64,000 nucleotides of DNA. Source: Squalus acanthias (Eukaryota). The stretch lies in assembly GCA_030390025.1 (NCBI GenBank), contig CM059452.1, forward strand, positions 6,448,001-6,512,000, given 5' to 3'. The notes under the pieces were generated by a model. The model was given only the letters and a program-made list of their open reading frames with translations. It searched no databases and was not told the DNA's origin. Below, in pieces: positions 890 through 27,878 of the stretch. A program made the position numbers and the translations under genes. Each line of letters starts with the position of its first letter. Within the stretch, counting starts at the first letter, position 1.

Positions 890-935
890 ATGAGGTCGGC
901 GATTTCTCTCAGTCTGTTGCTTGCTTTCTTATCCG
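890..935 (+). CDS. IGHV: IgM VH leader exon (MRSAISLSLLLAFLS/G)
   Basis: ATG at 890, hydrophobic signal peptide, phase-1 donor G|GTGAG at 935/936. Confidence 0.93.
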
Positions 936-1062
936 GTGAGTAGTTTTTATTGTCCAAGTCTCTCACTGTTACTGTCTCAGTGTTAGTCTCTCTCTGGAAT
1001 GTTACAGAGTCAGGAATCATTTCACCAGGATTAATCCTCGGGGTTTTTGATTGTTTTTACAG

Positions 1063-1367
1063 GTGTCCAGTCGGATGTGGTGTTGACTCAGCCAGAGGCA
1101 GAGACCAGGAGTCCCGGAGGCTCCCTGAGACTGACCTGTAAAACCAGCGGGTTCACTCTTAGTAGCACCTGGATGGGCTGGGTCCGACAGGTTCCCGGAC
1201 AGGGGCTGGAGTGGCTGGTTTACTATCTCAGTTCATCGAACGAGTATTACGCCCCAGGGATCCAGAGCCGATTTACTGCGTCCAAAGACAATTCAAACAG
1301 CATCTTCGCTTTGGACATGAAGAACCTGAGGACCGAAGACACCGCCATCTATTACTGTGCAAGAGAC
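1063..1367 (+). CDS. IGHV: Germline IgM VH exon, intact
   Basis: Acceptor TTTTACAG|; reads [14 protein letters not shown]...LTCKTSGF...[14 protein letters not shown]...RFTASKD...[11 protein letters not shown]. Both Cys and the conserved Trp are present. Confidence 0.96.
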
Positions 1368-1406
1368 CACAGCGAGAGGAACCAGGGCTGGACCCGTACA
1401 AGAACA
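1368..1406 (+). other. VH 23-RSS
   Basis: CACAGCG + 23 nt + ACAAGAACA. Confidence 0.92.
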
Positions 1407-1796
1407 GAACGAGGGGACATTCAACAACTTCCATCATAATCTGACGGTCAGTAATTGTATTAAACGCGATCTTAACAGCATTGTTCAGAACCAGACCACA
1501 CGCCGCTTCTTACTGAATTAACACACTGAAAATTCAATGGTAAAAATCTAGCACAGTAACCGATGTACTGAGGAGAGGTTTTGGCTGTGCTCATGTTTAC
1601 TGTTCACAGTGTCAGCAATGGCAGAGCTGGAGTTAATGCTCGTTTCAATATGATTGATACCTGGAGGGAGTTGGTTGGGACTGTGTTCACTTTCTATTAC
1701 GTTGTGTAAACTGTTGGATAAATTCTAAACTAGATCAGAAGTGAATGTCTATTTGAAGTGAATGTTGAGAGGCGGCACTGAACAGGGAGTGAGTGC

Positions 1797-1876
1797 AGTA
1801 TTTGTGCGGGTTCCTGTCACTGTGGTACAACAGTGGGTCACGGTGCTGTACAGAGCGAGCTCCTCATACAAAAACC
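1797..1876 (+). other. IgH D1 segment (GTACAACAGTGGGT, 1825-1838) with 5' 12-RSS and 3' 22(23-class)-RSS
   Basis: AGTATTTGT-12-CACTGTG | D | CACGGTG-22-ACAAAAACC, the canonical shark D1 arrangement. Confidence 0.92.
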
Positions 1877-2189
1877 CCAGACAGGGAGTTTGCTCACACC
1901 TGCGATCACTGCCACGGCAGGAGCGGCGGAGAAAATGAGGCTTAAATTAAAATAATGGGTAAAAGTAACATAGATTTATAACAATTTATAAAAGTGTTTT
2001 GCTTTATTAGTGTTGATTGTCGTGCTAAATCTGCACAGAGGCTTGAGAAGTTTTCCAATCCCTTTTATAAAGATAATGACCAGCACAAACTGAAATATCT
2101 CACTGATTCACTCTTAGGGGAGTCGGAATCAGGGTTTTGAGAGCGCTGTGGAATTTCATCTCTGTATTTTACAGTTAACAGTCCGCCGG

Positions 2190-2258
2190 AGTATTTGGCA
2201 CGGCGTGTCTCACTGTGGTACACTGGGTGGCACAGCAGTTACTGTCAATACAAAAACC
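2190..2258 (+). other. IgH D2 segment (GTACACTGGGTGG, 2218-2230) with 12/12 RSSs
   Basis: AGTATTTGG-12-CACTGTG | D | CACAGCA-12-ACAAAAACC. Confidence 0.92.
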
Positions 2259-2582
2259 CTCAGCACTAATTGAGTGAGTCTGGGTCAGTGTCGCTTTCAC
2301 AATCCAACTGTAGATGCAGTGAAGTCCTATTTGTGTCCAGCACTGTCCACTAGCACAGTTTAATATGGATAAACTGTGATAATTAATCATTGATCAGTTG
2401 ATGATTTCATTAACTGTTCAAGGGTTACTCTGTGAAATATAAAGGATCAGGGAATTTATAAAGAGTGAAAAGTATCCATTGACACATTTATCATTTTATG
2501 AAGATCCATCGTGACTTTACTTTTCCTCTGGGATGTGAATATTTAAACTAATGTTGGATTTCTGTCTGTTTTACACAGAGCC

Positions 2583-2621
2583 GGTTATTGTGTGACCCAG
2601 CCCGGGGAATGGAACACTGTG
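2583..2621 (+). other. JH 23-RSS
   Basis: GGTTATTGT-23-CACTGTG. Confidence 0.92.
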
Positions 2622-2669
2622 ACTACTTCGACTACTGGGGACAAGGCACCATGGTGACGGTGACTGCAG
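2622..2669 (+). CDS. IGHJ: JH segment (YFDYWGQGTMVTVTA)
   Basis: WGxG motif and phase-1 donor G|GTAAG at 2669/2670. Confidence 0.96.
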
Positions 2670-2724
2670 GTAAGAAACATTCACTCTTTCAGCAACTGTT
2701 GTATTTGTGCCTTTATTTTATATT

Positions 2725-4000
2725 TCTGTTTATTTCAATAATTCATTCATTCACTGAAACTTGGGTTCGGTGGATTCTGTATTGAGATTTTTTGCTCTGT
2801 TTCATTTGATTCTGCTGCAAAGGGATAATAGATTTAAACAGTTTCTTCAGAAAAAGTGTTGTTGAGGGATTGAGTCCCTGATTGATGTGATTTGGTGTTT
2901 ATCTGCTGATGAGACTGTGAGCCTGGGTTACTTTAAATACCCAACGGTTGTTGAACTGTTTGGAGTTTCTACAATGTTTATTCTCGGTGACATCTAATGG
3001 TTGTAGGTTTTCTGATCAAATGTAAACATTATGTGACTAAATGTGTTTGAAATAAGATTGCAGACAGAAAACAGAAAGCTTTAGCGGTCAAAAATAATCT
3101 TAAGATATTTTAATGTATTTTTATTTGTGATATTTACATTGTCAGCTTTTAATCTAATGTTCACCAACGGTCATATTCAATACGTGAAATGTTACTGTAA
3201 TTTATAACTACATAATCAACACATTTGTAGCCTGAATGAGATTTAAATTAATATAAATAAAGTTATCATATGTAGTAATATCACCCAATATTACAACAAT
3301 ATGCTATATCAATAGTAATTTATTAAACCTGATCCGTCTACTCTCAATTCCGCTGTCATTATTTTATATTTATGTTTATTTCAATAATTAATTCGTTCAG
3401 TGATAGATGGGTTCGCTGGATTCTGTATTGAGATTTTTTTGCAATGTTACATTTGATTCTGCTGAAAGGGTTTATAGAATGAAGCTGCTTCTCCACAAAA
3501 CGTTCTGTTGCGGGATTCAGCCCCTCAGTGATGTGATTTGCTGTTTATCTGCTGAGGAGAGTGTGTGCCTGGGTTACTTTGAATAAGTAAAGTTTGTGAA
3601 ACTGTTTGGAGTTTCTGCAATGTTTAATCTCGGTGACATCGAACTGCTGCAGGTTTTCTGATCTGTTTAAAACTGTTTGAAAGATGATTGTAGGCAGACA
3701 ACAAGTAGGTTTTATAAATCAAAAATCATTTAAAAATAATTTAATGCATGTTTTTATTTAAGTGAGAATTCCAGATTCAACTATTAATCTATGGTTTACG
3801 GTGCTCACATTTAATAGGTGAAATGTTACTGTAATTACGAATTATATAATTAACAATTTGCAGGTTGAAGGAGAGTTAAATTAATATAACTCAAACGATT
3901 AGAATGCGGTAATATTGCCCAATATCACTAAATATGTTGCAGTATTAATATTAATGTATTAAACATTATTCGCCTTCCACAATTCTGCTGTGCACTGGTC
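2725..4000. repeat. Diverged ~650-bp tandem duplication in the JH-Cmu1 intron (partial third copy ~5280-5830)
   Basis: Paired words such as TGGATTCTGTATTGAGATTTTTT (2771/3417), AACTGTTTGGAGTTTCT (2954/3600) and GTGAAATGTTACTGTAATT (3184/3818). Confidence 0.75.
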
Positions 4001-6159
4001 ACAATTAACCTGAGCGGAGAATTTTAGAGGCTGGAGACAATTTCTGATTTATGTCTGAAATTATTTTAATAACAGCAGACTGATTCCACCGCAGTGTTCA
4101 GTTTAATGAGGGTTTGAAATTAATTGTTATCTCCCTGTTTCACACAGATGAATGACAGATTGTATTTAATTATGCATTAAATGCGAGTATAAATTGCAGT
4201 TTGTAAATGTAATAAATCTGCCGGGTTATTAAATTCTTACTGTGCAGCGGAAACCATGTTATTCCTTCAATATTATTTGTTGTTTGATAGCGAGACAATA
4301 ATCACTAAACTAATCTTAAACAGTTTGTAAGATCATAGGCTGAGCGGTCGCTGGCAGTCAAAGAATTGTTCATATGATTCTATTTAAATTCACGGAAGGT
4401 GCAGACTGCGTAAGGCTGGAGACAGACAAATAACCCATTGACATTCAAGCAGATTAATTTAATTACAAAAGGTTAATATTAGTTTTGAATTTAATAACAA
4501 CATCCTGTCTCCCATAGCTGTGCTGTATACGGGATAGAATTATAGACAGTGAACAGATTACATCTGAGAGTTATGTTTAATTCTCATTAATGTTAAATTG
4601 ATCAACAAAATCTCTCCTCCATTTGCTCATTAAATTTCAGTGTCGCAGATGGTCTGATTGATTTGTTCTCCGCCAGTTTTACACTGATCATTCTGGAACT
4701 GATTTTCAATAAATAGCAGAATATATTTAATAATTAATTTACGGGCATTGTGTGAATTACGGGAGTAAAGTATAAAAAGATTGTCTGTGTTATTAAATAG
4801 CGGAGTCTCTGTTACTGACTGCAAACTGGCCGGTTGTCTTTTAATTCACGAAAATAGTATTTATAGTTAAGATTGAGGACAATGTTTAAACTCGAGAGCC
4901 CTGCTTTAGTAAACACACGGTGTTACAGTCCATCGGTAGTTAGTGAGATGTGACCACGGCCAGACTTTGAACTATTTAAAATAGTCCACTCCTAAATCCA
5001 TCATGTGAAATCCACTCTGAGAAAAGATGGAGTTTATGTTGTATCAGAGAGTTCAGAAACATGCAGAGTTTACAAGTGTGTAGATAGAGAGCGGGAATGT
5101 ATTAGAAGTTAGTGACCATTTTAAACTATTCAAATGTGATTTGATTTAAATAAAAATAATATATTTGTCTGAATGTCTTTATCTATTAATATGATTTTTA
5201 ATATTTTAATATTGATAAGTGTCATGTTAATTTAATTGAAACCCTATAAGTTCACAAGTTACCAGGCAGAAACAGGATTAAAATTAATATCAACTAATTT
5301 TAATATAATGCAGCTAACATCAATATTAACTTAGAATATAATATGAGTGCGAATTTATTAAACATAAATGACCTCCCACAATTGCGTTGTATACTGGACA
5401 GGATTACAGTTACTGCAAAATCTCAAGGATTGTAGAGAATTTTAAATGATGTCTAAAATTAATTTAGAAACAATACATGTCTTACTCAGCTGTACTCAGC
5501 TCGAGAAGGTGTCGCCGCAGATTTTAATGAATTAACTTCGTGTTTTGCCTCGATGATTTTACCGGTTATATTTAATTATGAAATTATATTTACCCAGTGG
5601 TTCCTAGTTCGTTAAATTCTTACTCTGTCACGGAGTCCCTGTTATATGCAGCAAATTACCCTGTAATGTGAATTATTTCAGTAAACTAGTTTTCAGGGAA
5701 ACTAAATCTTATTTGTTTGTAAGATTGTAGACAGGGAGGGAGAAATGGTTGGAAGTCGAAGAGAGTTTTTCAAATTAATATCAGTTTAATTTCAAAAAAC
5801 GTGCAGACTTGAGGTGGTCGGAAATTGACAAGAGATCAATCAGAAATCAGCTTCATTGAAATTGACAGATTGAAGAGATCTATCTGCTGAGAGCACGATT
5901 GTTGCACCGTTTGTGTCTGTTCTGTTTCTGTGCGCCTGCTCACTGTGTGAGAATCAGGAGTCCTCCTGACTGGCTGTAAACCTGCTGGTTTGTTCTCTTG
6001 TGTTTCATGGAGTACAATTCGAAACAGTTATTTCAGAAGCTTGTATCTGTGAGAAATGCGATAGTTTGACTTTAAGTTTGAGGAGGTGCCTCCGAGCTGG
6101 ATCAGTAACCCAGTTTGTGACATTCAGAAGCAGCATTTCAGAAACACGTCTGACAGACT

Positions 6160-7530
6160 GTAGAAGGAGCTTTAATCAGTTTCTAACCCGTGCCGTACCT
6201 GCCCTGGGAGTGTTTGATGGGACAGTGTAGAGGGAGCTTTACTCTGTATCTAACCCGTGCTGTACCTGCCCTGGGAGTGTTTGATGGGACAGTGTAGAGG
6301 GAGCTTTACTCTGTATCTAACCCGTGCTGTACCTGCCCTGGGAGTGTTTGATGGGACAGTGTAGAGGGAGCTTTACTCTGTATCTAACCCGTGCTGTACC
6401 TGCCCTGGGAGTATTTGATGGGACAGTGTAGCGGGAGCTTTACTCTGTATCTAACCCGTGCTGTACCTGCCCTGAGCGTGTTTGATGGGATAGTGTAAAG
6501 TGAGCTTTACTCTGTATCTAACCCGTGCAGCACCTGCCCTGGGAGTGTTTGATGGGACAGTGTAGAGGAAGCTTTACTCCATATCTAACCTGTACTGTAC
6601 CTGCCCTGGGCGTGTTTGATGGGACAGTGTAGAGGGAGATTTACTCTGTATCTAACCCGTACTGTACCTGCCCTGGGAGTGAATGATGGGACAGTGTAGA
6701 GGGAGCTTTACTCTGTATCTAACCCGTGCTGAACCTGTCCCTGGGAGTGTTTGATGGGACAATGTAGAGGGAGCTTTAATCTGTATCAACCCGTGCTATA
6801 CCTGCCCTGGGAGTGTTTGATGCGACAGTGTAGAAGGAGCTTTAATCAGTATCTAACCTGTGCTGTACCTGCCCTGGGAGTGTTTGATGGGACAGTGAAG
6901 AGGGAGCTTTACTTTGTATCAAACCCGTGCTGTACCTGTCCTGGGAGTATTTGATGGGACAGTGTAGCGGGGGCTTTACTCTGTATCTAACCCGTGCTGT
7001 ACCTACCCCGGGAGTGTTTGATGGGACAGTGTAGATGGAGCTTTACTCTGTATCTAACCCGTGCAGCACCTGCCCTGGGAGTGTTTGATGGGACAGTGTA
7101 GAGGGAGCTTTACACTGTATCGAACCCGTGCTGAACCTGCCCTGGGAGTGAATGATGGGACAGTGTAGACGGAGCTTTACTCTGTATCTAACCCGTGCTG
7201 TACCTGCCCTGGGATTGTTTGATGGGACAGTGTAGAGGGAGATTTACTCTGTATCTAACCCGTGCTGTTGTGTCCCGTGAATCTTTGATGTTTCAGTGTT
7301 GAGTGAGAATTTACTCTGTATCTAGTCGATGTTGTACCTGCCCTGGGAATGTTTGATTGTGCAATGTAGATGGGGCTTTACTCTGTATTTAACCAGTGCG
7401 GTGCCTTACCCGGAGTGTTTGACAGTGCTGTGCAGACTTGGCGTTGCTCGGAATCAATCCCTTCCTATACCTGACGGTACAGCAGATGGCAGGGCAGTGC
7501 AGAGGGAGCTTTACTCTGTATCTGTACTGT
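6160..7530 (+). repeat. 67-bp tandem satellite, ~17 good copies then degenerate copies
   Basis: Unit GTAGAGGGAGCTTTACTCTGTATCTAACCCGTGCTGTACCTGCCCTGGGAGTGTTTGATGGGACAGT with period 67 (e.g. 6221 to 6288). A solo inverted copy lies at ~20130-20183. Confidence 0.95.
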
Positions 7531-8282
7531 AACAGATCTGTGAGTGCTTTGTCCCGTGTTGTTCAAGGAAACTTAATGTGAATCCAACTAATAAAGTGTG
7601 AGTTCTCCAGCCAGATATATAAAAATAAAACTTTCCATTGCTCCGATGAAACAACCGCACATTAATTGAGTTTAACCTCATTGCAAATAAAACTGCCCAT
7701 TTTTTAATGAATTGATTAAACTTTACACATTTTGAGTATCAGATAATGATTGAATGAGATTGGCCTGATCCTGAGCTCACTTTCAGAACAAACAGTTTCA
7801 GGAAGTGACTGTAACGCTCCAGAAAGCAGCGCCTGTTCTGATCTGATGGGAGGCTGGAAGTTATTTTGAGAATTTAAATGGAGAATGTCGAGACTCCCGC
7901 TCCAAATAACCATCATGGGAACCTTATGTTTGAAAGCATTATTTCTTCAATTGTTTTTAAAAAGGTAACAGGCAGGGACAAACTCGGGTGAGGTGCAGCT
8001 ATTGGACTGGGTCACAGCACAAGGCTCACAGTCACTGAGCCGCACCTCTGTGAAACATTTAAAGAGAAACAGTCAGCCTGCGATGAGTCGTCATTCACAA
8101 TAAGCTTTAAGACTCTGTGACGGGATCCAATTGAATCATTTGAGTCAAATTCCTCAGTTCCCTTTATTTTAAATATCCTCTTGCATTATAACAAACAATA
8201 AAATAGATCTGATGGAGATGTTCAACATTATGAAACGTTTCCTTCCATTAAATCGGGAAGAACTAATTCCGCTGAGCCGTGT

Positions 8283-8950
8283 AGAATCACAAAATCTCAG
8301 AGCACAGAAGGGGCCATTCGGTCCGTCTTGCCTGTGCTGGCTCTGAAAGAGCTGTCCAATCAAATCCCAACTTTTCCTCGTAACCCTTCGCTGAGTCTCT
8401 TCAAGAACATGTCCAGTTGCCTCGTGCATTCCAGAAATTAACAACCCTCTGTTTGAAAAAATTAGCCTAATTTCCCCTCTAGATATTTTGCCAATTATTT
8501 TAATTCTGTGACCTTTGGTTACCGACATACTCGCCAGAAGAACCCTTTTCTCCCGACTTGCTCTGACAAAATCTCTCTCAATTTTGAACAGCTCTATTAG
8601 GTCTCCCCTTAACCTTCTCTGCTCCAAGGAACAATCCCAGCTTATCCAATCTCTCCGCATAACTGAAGTCTCTCATCCCTGGTATCCTCCTGGTCAACCT
8701 CCTCTGTACCCTCTCCAAGGCCTTGTCATCCTTCCTAAATTGTGTTGTCAGAATTGAATACACTACTCCATCTGATGCCTAACGAGTGATTTGTAAAGGT
8801 TTAGCAGGACTTCCTTGTTTTTCTATTCAATGCCCCTATTGCAGTGGCAAGTATCCCACACACTTCCGGAACCGCCTGATCAACTTGCCCTGCCACCTTC
8901 ACAGATTTGTGAATAAGCTCCCCAGGTCCCCCCTGCTCTTGCACCCCCGC
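8283..8950 (-). mobile_element. CR1 LINE 3' fragment
   Basis: Translated ALERVQRRLTRRIPGM and SLEQRRLRGDLIELFKI, typical of the CR1 ORF2 C-terminus; frameshifted. Confidence 0.85.
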
Positions 8951-10677: not shown

Positions 10678-10977
10678 CGACACAGTCTCCTCCCACCCTC
10701 TACGCCCTGCTCTCCACCTGTGAACAACCCAACACCGGCGGCCCCGTCACGTACGGCTGTTTGGCGATGGACTACTTCCCGGAAATCACCAGCCTTTCCT
10801 GGAGTAAAGATAAAGAGCCGATCACCACTGGATTGAAGACCTACCCGTCAGTGTTCAACAAGAAGGGAACCTACACCCTGAGCAGCCAGTTAACCATCAC
10901 CGAGTCAGAGGTGGGGAGCAGCGCCATCTACTGCCAGGTTCGACGAAGTGGGTCAGACTGGAGCGTCAAAATGCCAG
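10678..10977 (+). CDS. IGHM: IgM Cmu1 exon
   Basis: Acceptor TTCCCAG|; [17 protein letters not shown]...[11 protein letters not shown]...W...YTLSSQLTI...IYCQV; 300 nt; donor G|GTTAG. Confidence 0.93.
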
Positions 10978-11009
10978 GTTAGTGTTGTGGGCTACAGGGG
11001 GAAACTGTG

Positions 11010-11851: not shown

Positions 11852-12163
11852 ATCGTGTGGTACATCATCCAACTGTGATCCTCACCCTGAGTTCCAGTGA
11901 AGAAATCATCAGCAGCAGGTCTGTAACCGCCGTGTGTTCAATCATCGATTTCCGTCCAAAGTCAATCACCGTGAATTGGCTGAAGAAAGGACAGCTCATG
12001 GATTCGGGCTTCGTCACCTCTCCCGTCTGTGAAGTGAACGGGAACTTCTCGGCGACCAGTCGGCTGACATTCCCCGCCGGGGAATGGTTCGCCGGCTGGG
12101 TCTATACCTGCCAGGTCACTCATCAAGGGGTCACCCAAAGCCGAAACATCTCCAGATCTCAGG
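11852..12163 (+). CDS. IGHM: IgM Cmu2 exon
   Basis: TTCTTCAAG|; [19 protein letters not shown]...[19 protein letters not shown]...YTCQVTHQG; 312 nt; G|GTAAG. Confidence 0.93.
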
Positions 12164-14290: not shown

Positions 14291-14599
14291 ATGGTTCCTC
14301 ATGCAACGATCCAGAAATCACTCTTCCGCAACCGTCACTAGAACAGGTTTTACTGGAGGCGACGGTGACCTTAACCTGCGTCGTGTCTAATGCTCCTTAT
14401 GGAGTCAACGTGTCCTGGACCCGAGAAAAGGAGACTTTGAAATCAGAGATTGCCGTCCAACCCGGAGAGGCTCCCAACAGCGTGATCAGCAACTTAAACA
14501 TCTCGACACAAGCCTGGCTGAGTGGGGATGAGTTCTACTGCGTGGTGAGCCATCAGGATATGCCGACTCCTATAAGAGATTCCATCCACAAGGAAAAAG
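14291..14599 (+). CDS. IGHM: IgM Cmu3 exon
   Basis: TTCACAG|; [43 protein letters not shown]...[13 protein letters not shown]; 309 nt; G|GTGAG. Confidence 0.93.
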
Positions 14600-15114: not shown

Positions 15115-15506
15115 CTAAAGATCCGCGGGAACCGTCCGTGTCTGTCCTCCTGCCCCCGGCAGAAGAAGTCTCCGCTCAGAGGTTCGTCAGCCTCACCTGC
15201 TTAGTGAGAGGTTTCTCCCCCCGAGAGATCTTCGTCAAGTGGACCGTCAATGACAAGCCGGTGAATTCCGGCAACTACAAGAACACCGAGGTGATGGCGG
15301 AGAACGGCAGCAGTTCCTTCTTCATGTACAGCCTGTTATCCATTGCAGCGGAGGAGTGGGCCAGCGGCGCTTCTTACTCCTGTGTGGTGGGACATGAAGC
15401 GATCCCCTTGAAGATCATCAACAGAACGGTTAATAAATCCAGCGGTAAACCCAGTTTTGTCAACATTTCCCTTGTTCTGATGGACACCGTTAATTCTTGT
15501 CAATGA
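15115..15506 (+). CDS. IGHM: IgM Cmu4 exon plus secretory tailpiece (internal donor for the membrane form after 15444)
   Basis: TTCTGCAG|; [15 protein letters not shown]...[17 protein letters not shown]...YSCVVGHE; tailpiece [20 protein letters not shown] with an NIS glycosylation site and penultimate Cys; G|GTAAAC donor. Confidence 0.95.
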
Positions 15507-17589: not shown

Positions 17590-18365
17590 GTGAGTGTGTG
17601 TGTTTATGTGTAAGTGCTTTTGCGATTTTGTGTGTGTGTGTGTTTTTTGTAAGTGCACACTTACACATAAACACACACAGACTTACACATAAACACACGC
17701 ATTAACACATTGACATAGAATATTACACATACCCAGAATATAATACACACCCTCATTGTCAGACCCAGTTATTGGTACTCGCTGAAACTTTGAACAGTAT
17801 CGGAAATACACACGCGCACACCCTTAAACAAAACACACACAAACACACGCATTAACACACACACACTTACACACCCATAAACTCACACATGAACACAAAC
17901 ACACACACACAAACACACACTTACAAACAAACACACAATTACACAGAAACACTCACACGCTTACACCTGAACATACACAAACACTTCCACATAACCATAA
18001 ACATAAACATAAACACACACATGGACGCACATACACAAAAAACAAACACACAATTAAACATAAACACATTTACAAATAAACTTACACACAAACACACACA
18101 CAATTACAAATAAACACACACACTTATACAAAGACTTACACATAAACATACACAAACTGACAAAAATACACGCACACTTACACATAATCACACACTTACA
18201 CATAAATACCCATATATAGAATTACACAAACACGCAAACTTACACATCAACACACACACACTTACACATCAACACACACACAATTACACATAAACACACA
18301 CATTAACACACAAACACAGACTAAAACAAAACAAGAGATTGTTATACACACATACGCAAATACGA
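17590..18365. repeat. Degenerate (CA)n/(TG)n low-complexity tract
   Basis: Seen directly in the sequence. Confidence 0.9.
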
Positions 18366-19007
18366 ATGCGCGAAAAAACCTCAGGTTATAGACGATTGTA
18401 GAATTAAAATGCACTTTTTGAACGAGCACAGTTTCCAACGATTGTTCTGAATGAATAATTCCTGATACCATAAAATCTCACATTTCTCTATTCTGGTCCT
18501 ACACATACACTGAATCAATGTTCTTGTTGGAAACTGATACAAGTTAATTATGTTCAGAGTATTGCAATAACAAATAAATAAACAAGATTATAAATCACAT
18601 CTGATCTCTTACCCAGCCCCCTTGGCAGTCTCCAAATAAGTAGCTATCTAAACCTATCGTTAAAATAATCGATATCAATCAGTAAACCTCCCTCGATATT
18701 TCATCATATTATTCCCGAATCATCGATTGTACGAAATTGATGCAAAATCAATTAGCGTGTGACATTGAAGAAAAAACTGTCGTTTTTTCCAACACGGACT
18801 ATAGGAGGATCATAAAGGAAGAGCGACTGTGGAGTTAGGAACAGAGATAGATTGCTGAGAGAGATTAACTTAACACAAGATATACATTGAAAATTCAATT
18901 AGAGAAAAAACTGATACCTTAAGGAAAAGAAGGGAATATATAATAATAATATGATATCTTGGATTAATAAACGATCTGAATATATTTCCGCCTCTACATC
19001 CCCGTAG

Positions 19008-19135
19008 ATTCCTCAGACCACATCTTGATTGAAGACTATGAGGAAGAGAGCGGCAACATCTGGACAACCGCTTCCACATTCATCATCCTGTTCTTCCTGA
19101 GCATGTCCTACAGCGCTGCCGTCACTCTAGTGAAG
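19008..19135 (+). CDS. IGHM: IgM transmembrane exon TM1
   Basis: CCCGTAG|; DSSDHILIEDYEEESGNIWTTASTFIILFFLSMSYSAAVTLVK with the antigen-receptor CART-type TM; |GTGAG. Not in the supplied ORF track. Confidence 0.93.
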
Positions 19136-19275
19136 GTGAGGAGATTTAATCCACTCACACTTCGATCTGACTGAAGCGGTTTGACAAATCTCTAAAAGTT
19201 TCATTGATAAAAACCCTGAGATAAATGCCCCAAAACTCTAAATCTCTGCTTCATTCTTTTATCCCTCTTTTACAG

Positions 19276-19284
19276 ATCAAGTGA
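19276..19284 (+). CDS. IGHM: IgM TM2 exon (IK*; cytoplasmic tail KIK)
   Basis: CTTTTACAG|ATC AAG TGA; AATAAA at 19348 and 19741. Confidence 0.85.
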   Translation: MK

Positions 19285-20187: not shown

Positions 20188-21145
20188 CATAGAAGCATAG
20201 AAGATAGGAGCAGGAGTAGGGCATTCGGATCCTCGAGCCTGCTCCGACATTTAATGAGATCATGGCTGATCATCCAAATTCAGTACCCTGTCCCTGCTTT
20301 CTCCCCATATCCCTTGATCCCTTTAGCCTTAAGAAATATATCAATCTCCTTCTTGAATATATTTAATGAATTGGCCTCAACTGCCTTCTGTGGTGGATAA
20401 TTCCACAGGTTCACCACTCTCTGGTGAAGAAATTCCTCCTCATCTCAGTCCTAAATGGCTTACCCCTTATCGTTAGACTGTGACCTCTGGTTCTGGACTC
20501 CCCCGTCATCGGGAACATCCTTCCTGCATCTAGTCTGTCTAGTCCTGTTAGAATTTTATAAGTTTCAATGAGATCCCCTCTCATTCTTCGAAATTCTAGA
20601 GAATATAAGCCTAATCGACCCAATCTCTCTTCATACGTCATTCCTGCAATCCCAGGTATCAGTCTGGAAAATCTGCGCTGCACTCCCTCCATGGCAAGAA
20701 TATTCTTCCTCAGATAAGGCGACCAAAACTGCACACAATACTCAAGGTGTGATCTCACCAAGGCCTTGTACAACTGCAGCAAGACATCCTTGCTCCTGCA
20801 CGCGAATCCTCTCGCTATGAAGGCCAACATACCATTTGCCTTCTTAACCGACTGCTGCACCTAAATGCTTACCTTCAGCGACTGGTGCACAAGGACACCC
20901 AGATCTCGTTGCACTTCCCCTTTTCCCAATCTATTGCCGTTCAGATAATAATCTGTCTTCCTGTTTTTGCCACCAAAGTGGATAACCTCGCATTTATCCA
21001 CATTATACTGCATCTGCCATGCATCTGCCCAATCACCCAACCTGTCCAAATCATACTGGAGTTTCTCTGCATCCTCCTCACAGCACACACGCCCACCCAG
21101 CTTTGTGTCGTCTGCAAATTGGAGATATTACATCTAGTTCCCTCG
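20188..21145 (-). mobile_element. CR1 LINE 3' fragment
   Basis: WQMQYNVDKCEVIHFG, HLEYCVQFWSPYLRK and RRNFFT; very similar to the copy at 61465-62712. Confidence 0.9.
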
Positions 21146-22509
21146 GGGTCACAGCCCTGAGCCAGGGGTCACAGGCTGCACACACAGGGAATCTTTAGCG
21201 CTGAGCGGAGCCTGGAGTCTACCCGTGACCTCTGACCCTCAGTGAATGTGAAAAACAGCCAATTGCGGTGCTCTGACATGTGAAAAGCATTGTGGCGTCA
21301 TTCAGTGCAAGGCAAAGCGGTGACGGCCACGTTTGTGTGACGTACGGTGTGACGTGTGACTTCAATTCCCACAAAAGAAACGGTTTCCCTTTCTTAATAA
21401 AAGGGAGAAACTATGTGACAGAGATAAAGATACAGACAGCGATAATTGAAGCGGTTGGCGAGTTGCGCATGTGCGAAGAGTGCTCCCAGGGAGCAGCACG
21501 GCCCGTGGTCTACATTGGGCCTATTCTGGCCCGCTGTGCATTGTGGGAATCTCTGTCCTTCATGGCTGCTTAAATCACTGACAGGGTGTGAGCCAACTGA
21601 ACCACTAATGGCAATTTATTACAGCCACCCTCGGGGAAACTGCCACACAGTCAGAGTTCTCCTTACAGGACAATAACACTTGGTCAGATTTATTGCAGGT
21701 TAACTGACGCACTGAGGCAGCCAGTGAACGGAACAGCAAGAATAGCGAAAGAGTTCAGAAATCTCTCTATTTTCTCCACAGATCTCCCGCAACATTCAAC
21801 TAATTTTCTCTTTCATGTCCTCTCCCATTCGGTTGTGGGTTTCCAACACCTCTGTTTTCAAACTTGGAAAGTGGCATCTAAATATAGTGAAACTAAAGTA
21901 GAGTAATGGGTCGGAGGATTTCCCGAGCACCTCAATACATTAAGTACTTGGTTTTGAAGGAATACACGAGATGAAGTAACACACTCAGGCAGAATATGGG
22001 AACCAGATCCTGTCCCATTAACGGAGCGACCAGCAGGAGGTTCCTGGCGCTGTCAGCAACCTCTTTCTCGGAGCTGATCTTAACATTATTCACTGACCTG
22101 TCTGCAGTTCCTGTTTATGGGAAGCTGGGTTAGAGCGGTTCTGAATTAATATGCCATGCAGCAGTAAAGGTTTTATATCGTTAAACTAAAGACTGGAAGA
22201 AGAAAGTCGACACGATTAGTAAGAGTGGAGACAAGGGATGAAAAGAGACAGGCAGGCACGGAAATTGCATCAAAAGACAAAAGGTGAGTTGTGGAACCAC
22301 AGACATGATTGCTGAAGTTCATTTTTAGTATGGATGCGAGTTGAAATCACAAACTAATATAATTCGGCCAGGGGACCTCACCTGTTCTTGTTGAGTGCTG
22401 TGTTTTTTGTACTTTTAAGGAGGTCCGTGTGACTCTCACTGTGGAGGCTGAATTATTGCTTCTGGTTATCGGTGTGAGAGCGCCCTCTCAGTGTGCGTTT
22501 TGGTACACT

Positions 22510-24138
22510 AGGGACGTTGAATAGTTACAATTAATGCTCATTGAGGTTCCTTCCAGATATTGGGCTTCTGTTGGCCACTGCTTGAAAGAGTCTCCAGAAC
22601 TCAGTTCTGCAGAAAACATTCCTGGTTTCCCATGGAAACAGAATGAAAGTGAGAGTGAGTGCCCTTGATATCAAGGCAGCATTTGACCGAGTGTGGCCTC
22701 AAGGAGCCCTAGTAAAAGGGAAGTCAATGGGAATCAGGGGGAAAACTCTCCTCTGGCTGGAGTCATACCTAGCACAAAGGAAGATGGTTGTGGTGGTTGA
22801 AGGTCAATCATCACAGCCCCAGGACATCGCTGCAGGAGTTCCTCAGGGCAGTGTCCTAGGCCCAACCATCTTCAGCTGCTCCATCAATGACCTTCCCTCC
22901 AACATAAGGTCAGAAATGGGGATGGTCGCTGATGACTGCACAGTGCTCAGTGCCATTCGCAACTCTTCAGATAATGAAGGAGTCCATGCCCGCATGCAAC
23001 AAGACCAGGCAATGACTATCTCCAACAAGCGAGAGTCTAACCACCGCCCCTTGACATTCAACGGCAGTACCATCGCCGAATCCCCTACCATCCATATCCT
23101 GGGGTTGGGTGGTGGGGGGGGGGGGAGTTGTGGGGGGGGGGAGGGGGGTCACCATTGACCATATACTTAACTGGACCAGCCACATAAATACTGTGACAAC
23201 AAGAGCAGGTCAGAGGCTGGGTATTCTGCGGCGAGTGTCTCACCTCATGACTCCCCAAAGCCTTTCCTCCATCTACAAGGCACAAGTCAGGAGTGTAATG
23301 GAATACTCTCCACTTGCCTGGATGAGTGCAGCTCCAACAACACTCAAGAAGCTCGACACCATCCAAGACAAAGCAGCCCGCTTGATTGGCATCCTATCCA
23401 CCACCTTAGACATTCACTCCCTCCACCACCGGCGCACCGTGGCTGCAGTGTGTACCATTTACAAGATGCACTGCAGCAACTCGCCAAGGCTTCTTTGGCA
23501 GCACCTCCCAAACCTGCGACCTCTAACACCTAGAAGGACAAGGGCAGCAGGCGCATGGGAACACCAGCACCTCCAAGTTCCCCTCCAAGTCACACACCAT
23601 CCTGACTTAGAAGTATATCGCCGATCCTTCATCGTCGCTGTGTCAAAATCCTGGAACTTCATCCCAAGCAGCACTGTGGCAGTACCTTAACCACACGGAC
23701 TGCAGCGGTTCAAGGCGGCGGCTCACCATTACCTTCTCAAGGACAATTAGGGACGCCCACATCCCATGAACGAATAAAAAAATACGGATGACAGACAGAT
23801 AGACGGATGGACGGACAGAACGAAATGATAACACGTTTTTATTTTTTTACGATATTATTTTTCTATTCCTCGGTTTATACACAGGGAGACGAAGAGACAG
23901 GAAGAGAAAACAACAGATTAATGACTAGACATTAATATATAGACAGGTGGATATAGAGATACAGAAAGACAGATAGACAGACAGTCTGATAAATAATTGT
24001 GCAGGCAGAGACATCAATGAATGGAAGACAGTTGTGTAAATAGTGGAATGGACAGACAGACACAGATGTATAAATAAATAAACCAGCCAAATAACAACGT
24101 TGTTAGGCCCAAACAACTAAAAGCCCAAACTCCACCAT
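22510..24138 (-). pseudogene. TCR alpha/delta-type V pseudogene fragment (5' third of V exon 22510-22606; frameshifted leader ending at ATG 24138; LINE in intron)
   Basis: ELSSGDSFKQWPTEAQYLEGTSMSINCNYS, then truncated. Paralog of the 63-kb V, with flanks 24010-24310 matching 63700-63990. Confidence 0.75.
22645..23782 (+). mobile_element. Non-LTR retrotransposon (CR1/L2-clade) RT fragment with A-rich tail
   Basis: ALDIKAAFDRVW, GVPQGSVLGP, (F)ADD, YKAQVRSVMEYS; ends AATAAAAAAA. Confidence 0.85.
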
Positions 24139-24679
24139 GGCCGCAGTCTCCCCACACTGGGAGCCCGCACTTCACCCGGTGCCTCCTCTCAGTTGCAGCT
24201 TTCGGACTGAAGGGGAGAATTTGAAGTGTTTCTGTCAGCACACGGAGTCCCGTCATTTCCTGAATCAAACCAAGAGCCTGGTTTCAATGAGCTGCCAATG
24301 ATCATTGTCGCTGTCTGTGTTTATCATCACTGCCCGCGGCCCCGGCACACAGGCTCCCGGACATCTGATCATCCGATCCCGGGAATGGGTGCGGATTCTG
24401 TCTGACTGTTACCGGCCTCACCCACAATGTCATAGACAGATCCCGGAACAGAACCTAAGCAGAAATAAACCCTTCGATTGAAGGTTATTCTTCAAAAGGA
24501 TTCCCAGTTTAACTGTGTTTTGAAACCGATGCTCACGGTTAATGAGGAATCAATTTTAAGGTGTTCTTGCTGATAAAAAATAATCCATTTTATAGCAATG
24601 AAAATCTGACACGATATTGTCGCAATGTCACTACCTCAGAGTAATCCGTTAACGTCGGTTTACACTCGAACTATTTGCC

Positions 24680-26165
24680 TGTGTCTATGACTGTGTTTAT
24701 GTGTCTGTGTGTCTATGTGTGTGTTTATCTGTCTGTGTGTCTATGTATGTGTTTATCTCTCTGTGTGTCTATGTGTGTGTTTATCTGTCTATGTGTCTTT
24801 GTGTGTGTTTATCTGTCTGTGTGTCTATGACTGTGTTTATCGGTCTGTGTGACTCTGTGTGTGTTTATCTGTCTGTGTGTCTATGACTGTGTTTATCTGT
24901 CTGTGTGTCTATGTGTGTGTTTATCTGTCTGTGTGTCTATGACTGTGTTTATCTATCTGTGTGTCTATGACTGTGTTTATCTGTCTGTGTGTCTATGTGT
25001 GTGTTTATCTGTCTGTGTGTCTATGACTGTGTTTATCTGTCTGTGTGTCTATGTGTGTGTTTATCTGTCTGTGTGTCTATGACTGTGTTTATCTATCTGT
25101 GTGTCTATGACTGTGTTTATCTATCTGTGTGTCTATGTGTGTGTTTATCTGTCTGTGTGTCTATGTGTGTGCTTATCTGTCTGTGTGTCTATATGTGTGT
25201 TTATGTGTCTGTGTGTCTATGTATGTGTTTATCTCTCTGTGTGTCTATGTGTGTGTATATCGGTCTGTGTGTCTATGTGTGTGTTTATCTGTCTGTGTGT
25301 CTATGTGTGTGTTTATCTGTCTGTGTGTCTATGTGTGTGTTTATCTGTCTGTGTGTCTATGTGTGTGTTTGTCTGTCTGTGTGTCTATGTGTGTGTTTAT
25401 CTGTCTGTGTGTCTATGTGTGTGTTTATCTGTCTATGTGTCTATGTGTGTGTTTATCTGTCTGTGTGTCTATGTGTGTGTTTATCTGTCTGTGTGACTAT
25501 GTGTGTGTTTGTCTGTCTGTGTGTCTATGTGTGTGTTTATCTGTCTGTGTGTCTATGTGTGTGTTTATCTGTCTGTGTGTCTATGTGTGTGTTTATCTGT
25601 CTGTGTGTCTATGTGTGTGTTTATCTGTCTGTGTGTCTATGACTGTGTTTATCTGTCTGTGTGTCTATGTGTGTGTTTATCTGTCTGTGTGTCTATGTGT
25701 GTGTTTATCTGTCTGTGTGTCTATGTGTGTGTTTATCTGTCTGTGTGTCTATGTGTGTTTTTATCTGTCTGTGTGTCTATGTGTGCGTTTATCTGTCTGT
25801 GTGTCTATGTGTGTGTTTATCTGTCTGTGTGTATATATGTGTGCCTATCTGTCTGCGTGTCTATGTGTGTGTTAATCTGGCTGTGTGTCTATGTGTGTGT
25901 TTATCTGTCTGTGTGTCTATGTCTGTGTGTCGGTAAACTCCACAATACAAAAAACATTGTATGTTTCTGGGTTTATGTTGGCGTACTTATGGCTATATTT
26001 CTGCAAGTGTGTATATGTCTGTGAGTATATATACGTCTGTGTGTATGTATATGTTTCTCTGTGTGTATACGTATGTGTGCGTAAATATGTCTGCGTGTGT
26101 ATTTATGCGTGTGTATCTGTCAGTGTGTGTATATATTAGTGTGTCTATGTATGTGTCAGTGTACG
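24680..26165. repeat. 28-bp TG-rich minisatellite decaying into a (TG/TA) low-complexity tract
   Basis: Unit GTGTGTCTATGTGTGTGTTTATCTGTCT. Confidence 0.93.
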
Positions 26166-26177
26166 TGCGTGTTTCCA

Positions 26178-26587
26178 ACACGGTGGCATAGTGGTTAGCA
26201 CTGGTGCCTCACAGCGCCAGAGACCCGGGTTCGAATCTGACCTCGGGTGACTGTCTGTGTGGAGTTTGCACATTCTCCTCGTGTCTGCGTGGGTTTCCTC
26301 CGGGTGCTCCAGTTTCCTCCCACAGTCCAAAAATGTGCGGGTTAGGTTGATTTGGCTATGATAAATTGACCCTTAGTGTTAGGAGGGGGGGATAGGATGG
26401 GATATGTTAGGGGGAATTAAATACGTGGGGTTACGGGGCTAGGGTGGGATATGTGTACTGTGGGGATTAAAGCAGGGACAGGGTACTGGATTTGAATGAT
26501 CAGCCATGATCGTATTGAATGGTGGAGCAGGCTCGACGGGCCGAATGGCCTACTCCTGCTCCTAGATTCTATGTTTCTATGTTTCTA
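26178..26587 (+). mobile_element. tRNA-derived V-SINE (HE1-like) with CR1-derived tail
   Basis: A box TGGCATAGTGG, B box GGTTCGAATC, V-domain TGTGGAGTTTGCACATTCTC...GGGTTTCCTCCGGGTGCTCC, and a (TTCTATGT) tail. Confidence 0.85.
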
Positions 26588-26815
26588 ATGCACTACGTCA
26601 AGCTTGTACTGTCCGCAGGAGGGCGCTCTCTGATCACTTTACAAAGATCCTGATCCGCATCTACAGGAAGTGACTGTTTCGAGAGGTGCAAATGAGCGGG
26701 GAGAGGAAAGCCCAGCCAATCTGATGAGATCCCTGCGCTCTTCCAGTTTCTCCAATTCCAGGCCCGGTACAGGCAGTGATCACAGTCTCTTGTTTCTGGA
26801 GATCAGGCTGGAACC

Positions 26816-27287
26816 ATGGAGGTGAAACTCTGCCTAACTCTGGTTATTGTCCTGATCACAGGTCGGTGATATTGGAACCTTCCTATAACATTCTCCAATC
26901 CCCATCTCCATCTCCGGGTGATTATTCTCTTTCTGTTACTCTGTATAACCCGCTGTGTGCCCACTGTTTATTTTCAGAGATGTGTGACGGAGACTCGGTT
27001 TCCCAGTCAGAACAAGGTGTCGCATCAGAAGAGGGTTCAGATTCAGCAATAACCTGCAGTTACTCTGTATCGGGTTCAGCTACAAGCTATAACCTGTTTT
27101 GGTATCGCCAGTGTCCCCACAAAACCCCTCAGTATCTGCTCAGAGCCGATAGTTATGGGAATAACGAGACAGCTCCGGGCTTTGAACACTTCAGCGGGAA
27201 TCTCAACCTGACACAAGGCACTTTTCACTTATCCATGAAAGGCTTGAAGGTCACAGACAGCGCCGTGTATTACTGTGCCCTGAGACC
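26816..27287 (+). CDS. TCR alpha/delta-type V, intact (leader 26816-26861; V exon 26978-27287; 23-RSS 27288-27326)
   Basis: MEVKLCLTLVIVLIT/EMCDGDSVSQ...ITCSYS...LFWYRQ...PQYLL...TDSAVYYCALRP; CACAGTG-23-ACAACAACA. Confidence 0.88.
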
Positions 27288-27878
27288 CACAGTGAATAAG
27301 GGTCCCTCGGCCCTCATACAACAACAGGTCGGCATAGGGGAAGGAGGGTGAGATGGGATGGGTTGTCGTGCTGCACCTCAGGAAAATACCAGGGATTGAC
27401 TCCCCGAGGGGTTATACAGAAAATGAATGGGAAAATACAGCCTGATCCGATCGGGTTTCTCCAGTTATGTCAGTGCTGTCAGTGTTGGGATAAGAGAAAT
27501 TTCTCAACCATTTTAAGCCAGTGTGAAATTCAGACATTTCCACCACACTGTTAGCACAGATCTTCAGATCTCTGGGACGAATAACGGGTTAAATCTCTAC
27601 AAGCAGGTGTCCTGGGTGTGGTGAAGATCCGTCAGGCCCCATTTTTAAAAGCTATCTCACCGGTGCAGAGGGCTTTCCACTTGTCATGTCCCTCGTAGTC
27701 TTGGGGCTTCGACAAGTTAATGGAGCTCATTTGCTGTGGTGGGAAATAAGTGATACCGGGGATTGAATTGATTTATATTATTTTTCGCTTTTCACCTTAC
27801 TGAGAGAGAGAAGAAACGAGAGAGAAGGAATGAGAAAGTCACAGAGTTAAACAAAGTAAGTGACACCGAAACAAAGAC

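What the first reader, a model, noticed from the sequence alone, without database searches (positions are those of the whole stretch)
890..27326. A complete, apparently functional IgM heavy-chain cluster directly adjoining a TCR alpha/delta V array
Seen: every IgM exon (L, VH, D1, D2, JH, Cmu1-4, tailpiece, TM1/2) is open, in phase and has good splice sites and RSSs. The first TCR V remnant is ~3.2 kb and the first intact TCR V ~7.5 kb from the TM2 stop, with no gap between them. Established: nurse shark TCR delta chains use IgM/IgW VH segments, and Ig V material has been reported in the shark TCRAD region; as I recall, that material was largely orphan or defective. Inference: this may be a dual-use cluster that makes a normal antibody in B cells and donates VH (or VH-D1, through the 22/23-class RSS on D1) in cis to TCR delta D/J in T cells.
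Basis: partly seen in the sequence, partly recalled or inferred. Interest (0 to 1): 0.85.

Follow-up and report, generated by a model that had tools for sequence, protein, structure and literature searches.

The report
Shark IgM gene beside TCR V segments
This is an intact shark antibody (IgM heavy-chain) gene cluster followed within a few kilobases by T-cell-receptor-type V segments, a real arrangement that was already described for sharks and rays in 2025, so it is a clean example and not a discovery.

Summary
Window 890-19284 holds a complete elasmobranch IgM minicluster: split leader, VH, D1, D2, JH, Cmu1-4 with secretory tail, TM1 and TM2. All exons are open, all junctions before TM2 are phase 1, and the RSSs read 23 | 12-22 | 12-12 | 23. 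From 22.5 kb to 63.2 kb lie 16 TCR-type V elements, 8 on each strand. Seven are intact with leader, open exon and 23/24-spacer RSS. There is no N gap between Cmu and the first V.

cDNA-like public runs show leader-to-V splicing, many diverse V-to-JH joints and JH spliced to this Cmu1 sequence. This holds at VH-family level (95% likeness or more); this gene's own CDR2 carries about 1% of that depth.

The window holds no TCR D, J or C. No joint or loose end that was shown links the VH to anything but JH and Cmu.

The dual-use idea (the same VH donated to TCR delta) fits the 12/23 rule but stays untested. Flajnik et al. 2025 (PMC12227049) already report IgM/IgW/IgNAR clusters linked to TCR alpha/delta, with TCR-type V exons between IgH clusters, and already offer proximity as the reason for trans-rearrangement.

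Unchecked first-reader notes of this scan describe the same arrangement in many other windows of this genome.

The parts
716..837 (+). Promoter region of the VH: TGACGT at 716-721, TATA-like TATTTAA at 790-796, transcript 5' ends near 837. No ATGCAAAT octamer anywhere in the window.
   Evidence: In one search a sequencing adapter abuts position 836 in one X2 contig, and depth rises between the 769-837 and 838-906 bins.
890..935 (+). IgM leader exon (MRSAISLSLLLAFLS, phase 1, donor GTGAGT)
   Evidence: The splice 935->1063 (GT..AG) is seen in an X1 contig.
1063..1367 (+). VH exon, open, Cys/Trp/Cys framework, ends YYCARD
   Evidence: Pfam V-set E 1.3e-15. Best named relatives are Heterodontus francisci Ig heavy chain V region HV01 at 78% and a Chiloscyllium punctatum protein at 78%.
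1368..1406 (+). VH RSS: heptamer CACAGCG, 23-nt spacer, nonamer ACAAGAACA
1797..1876 (+). D1 (1825-1838) with 5' 12-spacer RSS (1797-1824) and 3' 22-spacer RSS (1839-1876, CACGGTG/ACAAAAACC)
2190..2258 (+). D2 (2218-2230) with 12-spacer RSSs on both sides
   Evidence: D2-like letters (ACTGGGTGG) occur between V and J in cDNA contigs (table 5c).
2583..2669 (+). JH (2622-2669, YFDYWGQGTMVTVTA) with 23-spacer RSS (2583-2621) and donor GTAAGA
   Evidence: Loose ends behind 2669 read the first bases of Cmu1 (table 7).
10678..10977 (+). Cmu1 exon
   Evidence: Pfam C1-set E 1.3e-13.
11852..12163 (+). Cmu2 exon
   Evidence: C1-set E 2.6e-17.
14291..14599 (+). Cmu3 exon
   Evidence: C1-set E 9e-10.
15115..15506 (+). 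Cmu4 exon with secretory tailpiece ([20 protein letters not shown]). Internal donor for the membrane form after 15444. AATAAA at 15536.
   Evidence: C1-set E 9.9e-23. Aligns to solved IgM mu chains through the tailpiece, e.g. 8gzn_A residues 329-452 of 453, E 5.8e-50.
19008..19135 (+). TM1 exon (acidic stretch plus hydrophobic span)
19276..19284 (+). TM2 exon (IK, stop)
22518..22580 (-). FR1 remnant of a TCR-type V (like the V at 62930). A flank at 22087-22488 resembles the flank of V41663.
26816..27326 (+). TCR-type V, intact: leader 26816-26861, exon 26978-27287, 23-RSS
   Evidence: Named relatives are TCR alpha V: 2 of 41 hits carry that name, and none is named as Ig.
28300..28771 (+). TCR-type V, intact: leader 28300-28345, exon 28431-28731, 24-spacer RSS
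31060..31573 (+). TCR-type V pseudogene (in-frame stop in FR1). Leader MRLLSIWAVWGAFLT.
32286..32631 (-). TCR-type V pseudogene (stop, first Cys lost) with 23-RSS
34145..34476 (+). TCR-type V, open exon and 23-RSS (CACAGCG/ACAAAAACC). No convincing leader found.
34595..34820 (-). TCR-type V remnant (frameshifted)
35984..36064 (+). Start of a TCR-type V cut by the N run 36058-36277. The N run was not filled.
38666..39135 (-). TCR-type V, intact (leader 39135-39081, exon 39021-38705, 23-RSS). FR2 reads QGLEWV but the V is only 36% identical to the VH.
41624..42139 (-). TCR-type V, intact (leader 42139-42094, exon 41967-41664, 24-spacer RSS)
44126..44715 (+). TCR-type V, intact (leader 44126-44171, exon 44364-44676, 23-RSS)
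46164..46634 (+). TCR-type V, intact (leader 46164-46200, exon 46289-46595, 23-RSS)
47186..47500 (+). TCR-type V pseudogene: second Cys replaced by Trp (YFW), degenerate RSS
53981..54483 (-). TCR-type V, intact (leader 54483-54438, exon 54326-54020, 23-RSS)
   Evidence: dN/dS 0.34 against V44677.
58694..59037 (-). TCR-type V, open exon, weak heptamer CACTCTG, no convincing leader
62891..63240 (-). TCR-type V pseudogene (in-frame stop) with 24-spacer RSS

Best explanation
This is one ordinary, functional-looking IgM heavy-chain minicluster of an elasmobranch. It lies in the large chromosomal region where IgH miniclusters and TCR alpha/delta-type V segments are interspersed, the 'antigen receptor complex' of Flajnik et al. 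2025.

How it most likely works in B-lineage cells:
- RAG joins VH, D1, D2 and JH within the cluster. The RSS spacers 23 | 12-22 | 12-12 | 23 allow each of the three joins.
- Transcription starts about 50 nt upstream of the ATG, from a TATA-containing promoter without an octamer.
- The VDJ exon is spliced to Cmu1-4.
- Either the tailpiece with its poly(A) site gives the secreted form, or the internal Cmu4 donor with TM1 and TM2 gives the membrane form.

The TCR-type V segments downstream are a locally duplicated and inverted set. About half are intact and under purifying selection. They fill the space between this IgM cluster and the next.

Shown here: the anatomy, the splice and RSS logic, and expression of this VH/JH/Cmu family as rearranged, spliced mRNA. 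Inferred: that this particular cluster is itself rearranged and expressed, and that the neighbouring Vs serve TCR alpha/delta chains.
For: Anatomy:
- All exons and RSSs were read directly.
- V-set and C1-set domains are found in every expected exon.
- Cmu4 plus tailpiece aligns end to end with solved IgM mu chains.
- The VH's best named relatives are shark Ig heavy-chain V regions.
- Segment spacings are 457, 379 and 391 nt. A review gives 250-500 bp within shark clusters and VH-D1-D2-JH-C as the unit (PMC5192425, passages).

Expression, in three cDNA-like runs:
- Depth over leader, V and J is 10^4 to 10^5; between D2 and JH it is 0 to 23.
- The 935->1063 splice is present.
- All 15 joints shown from the V end (of 54 listed) run from 1358-1368 to 2616-2634, with 12-40 non-templated or D-like letters between.
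- Loose ends after 2669 read the first 27 bases of Cmu1 at 10678.
- An X1 contig of 254 nt lies on the V-D1 spacer (1418-1671) with no differences.

Neighbours:
- 16 V elements were found.
- 23/24-spacer RSSs were found on 12 of the 16.
- Seven are intact.
- dN/dS is 0.34 between the intact paralogues V44677 and V54019.
- The named hits are TCR alpha V.
- Leader MRLLSIW and FR3 DAAVYY match the primer peptides MQLLSIW (delta V5) and DAAVYY (alpha V4) of nurse shark (PMC5931798, Table 7).

Against: - The expression evidence is at family level. Contigs counted from 95% likeness.
- At position 1079 most depth carries another base (X1: 39,645 of 42,747).
- At CDR2 position 1228 the summed depth in X1 is 4,881, against a bin mean of 566,447. 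X2's only contig there differs, and X4 has none.
- The runs are contigs of coded organisms, with 'RNA' only guessed by the tool.
- The VH heptamer departs from consensus (CACAGCG), and no octamer is present.
- The alpha/delta class of the neighbouring Vs is not firmly established. PDB searches were swamped by multi-domain antibody constructs. The Atlas put a TCR gamma V cluster first (0.96) and an alpha/delta cluster at 0.94.
- Contiguity of 19.3-26.8 kb was not checked with reads.
Confidence: 0.85

Rival explanations
1. Dual-use cluster. The same germline VH, or VH-D1, is used for IgM in B cells. In thymocytes it is joined by RAG in cis to TCR D-delta/J-delta, giving VH-TCR-delta chains.
For: - RSS compatibility: VH carries a 23-RSS and D1 a 22-spacer 3' RSS. 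Both could pair with a 12-RSS.
- IgM/IgW V to TCR delta D rearrangements are described as common in sharks, and the authors attribute them to proximity (PMC12227049; PMC5931798 discussion passage).
- The germline V-D1 spacer is present in a cDNA-like run at depth about 100-300. This would fit an accessible, unrearranged cluster.
Against: - No TCR D, J or C lies in the window.
- The location and orientation of D-delta/J-delta/C-delta relative to this cluster are unknown. An unchecked scan note places a TCR D/J cassette on another assembly piece.
- All 15 joints shown from the V end go to JH, and no shown loose end leaves the V 3' end (39 joints and 30 loose ends were not shown).
- The tissues of the runs are unknown.
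- The adjacency is shared by many IgM clusters, so it does not single out this one.
Confidence: 0.25
2. The neighbouring TCR-type Vs are orphons: decaying copies scattered among IgH clusters and never used in a receptor.
For: - 6 of 16 elements are pseudogenes or remnants, and 2 more lack a recognisable leader.
- They lie on both strands, 8 and 8.
- No J or C lies in the window.
Against: - Seven have leader, correct splice phases, an open exon and a good RSS.
- dN/dS is 0.34 at dS 0.25 between two intact paralogues. It is 0.39-0.67 in the three within-family pairs that include a broken or doubtful copy.
Confidence: 0.15
3. The juxtaposition is an assembly artefact: the IgM cluster and the V array were joined wrongly across repeats.
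For: The interval holds LINE fragments and a 1.25-kb array of 28-bp repeats at 24680-25928. Such repeats are classic places for false joins.
Against: - There is no N run in the interval.
- A V remnant with its flank already lies at 22.09-22.58 kb, before the repeat array.
- The same arrangement is published for four species, and unchecked scan notes report it in many other windows.
Confidence: 0.05
4. The 23-RSS TCR-type Vs can rearrange to the 12-RSS of an IgH D1, by inversion onto this cluster or by deletion onto the next one, giving TCR-V/IgM chains.
For: Only the 12/23 rule and the geometry. Other first-reader notes raise the same idea (unchecked).
Against: - The review states that all available data show rearrangement within, not between, clusters (PMC5192425).
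- No such joint is among those shown.
Confidence: 0.04

Closest known systems
Elasmobranch IgM heavy-chain minicluster (VH-D1-D2-JH-Cmu1-4-TM), as in horn shark and nurse shark
   Same: - One VH with split leader, two Ds, one JH, four C exons, a tailpiece and two TM exons.
- Segments 380-460 nt apart.
- RSS spacers 23 | 12-22 | 12-12 | 23.
- The layout and spacing are as given in PMC5192425. That the RSS pattern is the canonical one is recalled from the older shark literature, not from a call.
   Different: VH heptamer CACAGCG. No ATGCAAAT octamer in the 64 kb.
Antigen receptor complex of Flajnik et al. 2025 (PMC12227049): IgM/IgW/IgNAR clusters linked to TCR alpha/delta, with TCR alpha/delta-type V exons between IgH clusters
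   Same: A complete IgM cluster with TCR-type V exons directly beside it. Some Vs carry Ig-like motifs (V38704, QGLEWV).
   Different: - The paper works at gene-model and map level. Its coordinates are in a supplementary table that I could not open.
- Here the nucleotide-level state of each V, its strand and its RSS are given.
- The species of the window is unknown to me.
IgH V to TCR delta trans-rearrangement in nurse shark (Criscitiello et al. 2010, known to me only through citing passages)
   Same: A VH with a 23-RSS lying on the same chromosome region as TCR V segments.
   Different: No chimeric transcript or joint was seen here.
TAILV / VH-delta segments (Ig-like V segments resident in TCR delta loci; Deiss et al. 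2019, cited, not readable here)
   Same: An Ig-type V physically among TCR Vs.
   Different: The VH here has its own D, J and Cmu, so it is a bona fide Ig cluster V and not a V-only segment. V38704 is not VH-like overall: 36% identity to the VH, against 40-42% to TCR-type neighbours.

Membership tests
Elasmobranch IgM minicluster | Single VH with split leader and 23-spacer RSS | tested here: met
   The leader-V splice is seen in cDNA-like contigs.
Elasmobranch IgM minicluster | Two D segments flanked by RSSs that permit V-D1, D1-D2 and D2-J joins | tested here: met
   D1 has 12 and 22 spacers, D2 has 12 and 12.
Elasmobranch IgM minicluster | One JH with 23-RSS, WGxG motif and splice donor | tested here: met
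   It is the only J-like element in the 64 kb.
Elasmobranch IgM minicluster | Four C1-set exons, mu-type tailpiece, two TM exons reached from an internal Cmu4 donor | tested here: met
Elasmobranch IgM minicluster | Expressed as rearranged VDJ spliced to Cmu | tested here: inconclusive
   Met for the VH/JH/Cmu family at 95% likeness or more. This gene's own CDR2 holds about 1% of the family depth in X1, and is not seen unchanged in X2 or X4.
TCR alpha/delta V segment | V-set exon with split leader and 23-spacer RSS | tested here: met
   7 of 16 elements are complete. 23- or 24-spacer RSSs were found on 12 of the 16.
TCR alpha/delta V segment | Sequence closer to TCR alpha/delta V than to other V classes | tested here: inconclusive
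   - 2 of 41 hits are named TCR alpha V and none is named as Ig.
- Short peptide matches to nurse shark alpha V4 and delta V5 primers.
- The Atlas ranks a TCR gamma cluster first.
- PDB searches were uninformative.
TCR alpha/delta V segment | Joined to J-alpha or D/J-delta and spliced to C-alpha/C-delta in thymocytes | not tested
TCR alpha/delta V segment | Linked in cis to TCR D/J/C | not testable with these tools
   None in the window. The wider assembly cannot be read.
TAILV / VH-delta (Ig-like V dedicated to TCR delta) | Ig-like V segment without its own D-J-C, resident in the TCR V array | tested here: not met
   The VH has its own D1, D2, JH and Cmu. V38704 is not VH-like overall.
Dual-use VH (Ig and TCR delta) | The same germline VH found on both Cmu and C-delta transcripts | not tested
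   Only JH/Cmu partners appear among the joints and loose ends shown. The tissues are unknown.

The most novel reading that the evidence does not exclude
This intact IgM cluster is truly bifunctional. Its promoter opens the unrearranged cluster in thymocytes (the germline V-D1 spacer transcripts would be the trace). Its VH, or VH-D1, is then joined in cis across the flanking TCR V array to D-delta/J-delta. One germline V gene would thus feed both the antibody and the gamma/delta T-cell repertoires.
Probability: 0.2. Interest if true: 0.55.

Novelty: already known. Interest (0 to 1): 0.3.

Why it matters
The physical mixing of antibody heavy-chain clusters with TCR alpha/delta V segments bears on three questions:
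- how Ig and TCR loci diverged;
- why sharks make VH-TCR-delta chimeras;
- why AID mutates shark TCR genes.

That point was made in 2025 (PMC12227049). This window adds a base-level example:
- a fully intact cluster 3.2 kb from the first V remnant and 7.5 kb from the first intact TCR-type V;
- a V set that is half intact, on both strands, and built by local duplication and inversion;
- sequence markers (CDR2, positions 1079 and 1228) that would let a repertoire experiment ask whether one defined germline VH serves both receptors.

Tried and rejected
- Classifying the neighbouring Vs through solved structures failed. phmmer and a 9-sequence profile gave thousands of hits led by multi-V antibody constructs.
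- A plain homologue search with the 95-aa V exon found only bony-fish and turtle proteins at 42% identity or less, with no informative names. Repeating it with the natural 191-aa open frame and the 'region' option reached longer proteins and two TCR-alpha names.
- The ESM Atlas did not separate the TCR classes.
- The V-profile HMM found no V between 19.3 and 26.9 kb. The FR1 remnant at 22.5 kb was seen only in the six-frame print and placed.
- I considered V38704 as a TAILV-like Ig/TCR intermediate because of QGLEWV. I rejected this on overall identity.
- I looked for TCR J, D and C in the window and found none.
- Scan notes gave no location for TCR C-delta or C-alpha.
- The species could not be named. 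Runs and organisms are coded, and the best named VH relatives are only 78% identical.
- Deiss 2019, Criscitiello 2010 and Hsu 2016 are not held. What I say of them rests on citing passages or recall.
- Table S1 of PMC12227049, which may list this very locus, is a supplement and was not opened.
- A claim that no paper describes this particular cluster cannot be made.

Full report
WHAT IS THERE

- The leader exon runs 890-935 and ends in phase 1 at G|GTGAGT.
- The VH exon runs 1063-1367 and ends YYCARD. It is followed by heptamer CACAGCG, a 23-nt spacer and nonamer ACAAGAACA.
- D1 (1825-1838) has a 12-spacer RSS on its 5' side and a 22-spacer RSS (CACGGTG/ACAAAAACC) on its 3' side.
- D2 (2218-2230) has 12-spacer RSSs on both sides.
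- JH (2622-2669, YFDYWGQGTMVTVTA) has a 23-spacer RSS and a GTAAGA donor.
- After an 8-kb intron come Cmu1 (10678-10977), Cmu2 (11852-12163), Cmu3 (14291-14599) and Cmu4 (15115-15506).
- Cmu4 carries the tailpiece [20 protein letters not shown] and an AATAAA at 15536.
- An internal donor after 15444 leads to TM1 (19008-19135) and TM2 (19276-19284).
- Every junction up to TM1 is phase 1.

Pfam finds V-set in the VH and C1-set in each C exon. Cmu4 with its tail aligns to the last residue of solved IgM mu chains. The VH's best named relatives are shark Ig heavy-chain V regions: Heterodontus francisci HV01 at 78% and a Chiloscyllium punctatum protein at 78%. The exons were searched one by one; the joined model was not searched.

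THE NEIGHBOURS

A tblastn with the window's own Vs, a profile HMM of nine of them, an RSS scan and a leader/acceptor scan give 16 TCR-type V elements between 22.5 and 63.2 kb, eight on each strand.

- Seven are complete, with hydrophobic leader in phase 1, acceptor in phase 2, open exon and a 23- or 24-spacer RSS. Their heptamers lie at 27288+, 28732+, 38704-, 41663-, 44677+, 46596+ and 54019-.
- Two are open, but I found no convincing leader (34438+, 58733-).
- One is cut by the only N run of the window, 36058-36277.
- Six are pseudogenes or remnants:
  - 31535+ has a stop.
  - 32324- has a stop and has lost its first Cys.
  - 34595-34820- is frameshifted.
  - 47186+ has Cys replaced by Trp.
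  - 62930- has a stop.
  - 22518-22580- is an FR1 remnant.

The first intact V starts with its leader at 26816, 7.5 kb after the stop.

Self-comparison shows the set grew by local duplications of 0.4-1.1 kb at 81-93% identity, in both orientations. Between the intact paralogues V44677 and V54019, dN/dS is 0.34 at dS 0.25. The three within-family pairs that include a broken or doubtful copy give 0.39-0.67.

There is no other J-like element, no other RSS-flanked D and no other C1-set exon in the 64 kb.

ARE THEY ALPHA/DELTA VS?

The evidence is moderate.

For:
- A search through the natural open frame over V27288 gave 41 hits. Two carry a class name and both are TCR alpha V. None is named as Ig.
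- The leader MRLLSIW of V31535/V54019 and the FR3 words DAAVYY and LTISGL resemble the primer peptides MQLLSIW (delta V5), DAAVYY (alpha V4) and LTITGL (delta V7) of nurse shark (PMC5931798, Table 7, read).

Against a firm call:
- The Atlas put a TCR gamma V cluster first.
- The PDB searches were uninformative.

I therefore write 'TCR-type, most likely alpha/delta'.

EXPRESSION

The look-up of sequencing runs returned 17 coded runs, all held as contigs. None holds half of the words or more.

I laid X1, X2, X4 and X15 on 700-2750. X1, X2 and X4 behave as cDNA.
- In X1 the summed depth is 165,379 over the leader bin, 524,091-566,447 over the V bins and 108,269 over JH.
- It is 316 just after the RSS and 0 between D2 and JH.
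- The 935->1063 splice is present.
- All 15 joints shown (of 54) run from 1358-1368 to 2616-2634, with 12-40 letters between. Some of those letters are D2-like.
- Loose ends after 2669 read the start of Cmu1 as in this window.
- One X2 contig has a sequencing adapter abutting 836, which puts a transcript 5' end near 837. That is about 40 nt after TATTTAA (790-796).

This is family-level evidence.
- At 1079 most depth has another base.
- At CDR2 position 1228 only 4,881 of depth crosses in X1, of which 1,082 has another base.
- X2's single contig there differs, and X4 has none.
- So this gene, or a near-identical allele or paralogue, accounts for about 1% of the family signal. That is about what one cluster among many would give.

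A 254-nt X1 contig lies on the V-D1 spacer without a difference, and depth there is about 100-300. I read this as read-through or germline transcription of an unrearranged cluster (inference). Carried-over DNA is the alternative.

None of the loose ends shown (24 of 54) leaves the V 3' end for foreign sequence. There is thus no sign of a TCR partner, but the tissues are unknown.

WHAT IS KNOWN

Flajnik et al. [quoted passage not shown] - Other Vs are intermediate between Ig and TCR.

Whether this very locus is in their Table S1 I cannot say. Supplements are closed and the window's species is unknown to me.

The 2016 review (PMC5192425, passages) gives the VH-D1-D2-JH-C unit, 250-500 bp between segments and 120 to more than 200 kb between nurse shark IgM clusters. 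It also states that rearrangement is seen within, not between, clusters.

Unchecked first-reader notes of this scan place on the same assembly piece:
- further IgM clusters beside TCR V arrays, from 0.49 Mb before to 10.5 Mb beyond this window;
- the next complete IgM cluster, about 89 kb beyond its end;
- IgNAR clusters at +10.2 to +11.2 Mb.

A note on a TCR D/J cassette lies on another piece. I did not test these notes. They fit the paper's picture and suggest that the adjacency is the rule here, not a property of this cluster.

HOW IT MOST LIKELY WORKS

In B cells the cluster does what shark IgM clusters do: three RAG joins within the cluster, transcription from its own promoter, splicing to Cmu, and a secreted or membrane 3' end.

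The neighbouring Vs most likely belong to the dispersed TCR alpha/delta V pool. Their mixed orientation means that about half would have to join by inversion.

The dual-use reading is allowed by the RSS spacers and by the literature, but nothing here shows it for this VH. I give it about 0.2-0.25.

The rival readings are ranked in their own section: orphon Vs, a false assembly join, and TCR-type V joining to IgH D-J.

VERDICT

- The kind of arrangement is already known.
- Interest is modest. The window is a well-resolved example with usable sequence markers for the one experiment that would settle dual use.

Noticed in passing
window 1-64000 (promoter 716-837): No ATGCAAAT/ATTTGCAT octamer anywhere in the 64 kb. 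The VH promoter has TATTTAA (790-796) and a CRE-like TGACGT (716-721). A neighbouring first-reader note (s1-889812) calls this promoter octamer-less, with octamer modules further upstream, outside the window.
   Followed up: partly
window 6159-7422: A 67-bp unit repeated 18.9 times (87% matches) inside the JH-Cmu1 intron. The intron also has an internal duplication, 2713-3356 against 3359-3991 (77%).
   Followed up: no
window 16424-18400: Between Cmu4 and TM1 lies a 52-bp C-rich unit repeated 15.9 times (96% matches), followed by about 0.8 kb of CA-rich low-complexity sequence.
   Followed up: no
window 24680-25928: A 28-bp TG-rich unit repeated 44.6 times, between the IgM cluster and the first intact TCR-type V. 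This is the weakest point for assembly contiguity.
   Followed up: no
window 44126-44171 and 42139-42094: V44677 belongs to the same V family as V31535 and V54019. Its leader (MRNRLAPLLIIISLL), however, is nearly that of the unrelated V41663 (MYNRLAPLLIIISLL). DNA similarity to its own family starts only at 44268, inside the leader intron. This looks like leader/V-exon shuffling by recombination.
   Followed up: partly
window 38705-39021 (-): An intact TCR-type V with the VH-like FR2 motif QGLEWV and the ending YYCAIDP. It is 36% identical to the VH and 40-42% to TCR-type neighbours. It may be one of the 'intermediate' Vs mentioned in PMC12227049.
   Followed up: partly
window 47186-47500 (+): A V-like exon with extra cysteines (TRVCLSW, LIRCTD), the canonical second Cys changed to Trp, and a degenerate RSS (CACACGG, 23-nt spacer, ACAATAAAC).
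   Followed up: partly
window 1365/2630 in run X15: The DNA-like run X15 (even depth over spacers) has one contig, depth 7.3, that joins the V end to JH. This is either a germline-joined paralogue or lymphocyte DNA in the sample.
   Followed up: no
window 1390-1870 in run X1: The V-D1 spacer is present in a cDNA-like run at depth about 100-300, with one 254-nt contig identical to the window. Depth falls to 0 between D2 and JH. This may be a germline (sterile) transcript of the unrearranged cluster.
   Followed up: partly
window 20188-21145, 22643-23690, 29531-30514, 56046-56801, 61473-62757: Reverse-transcriptase-bearing LINE fragments, some 92% alike, lie scattered between the receptor segments. 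A short repeat found after the RSS of V28732 also interrupts the V remnant at 22.5 kb.
   Followed up: no
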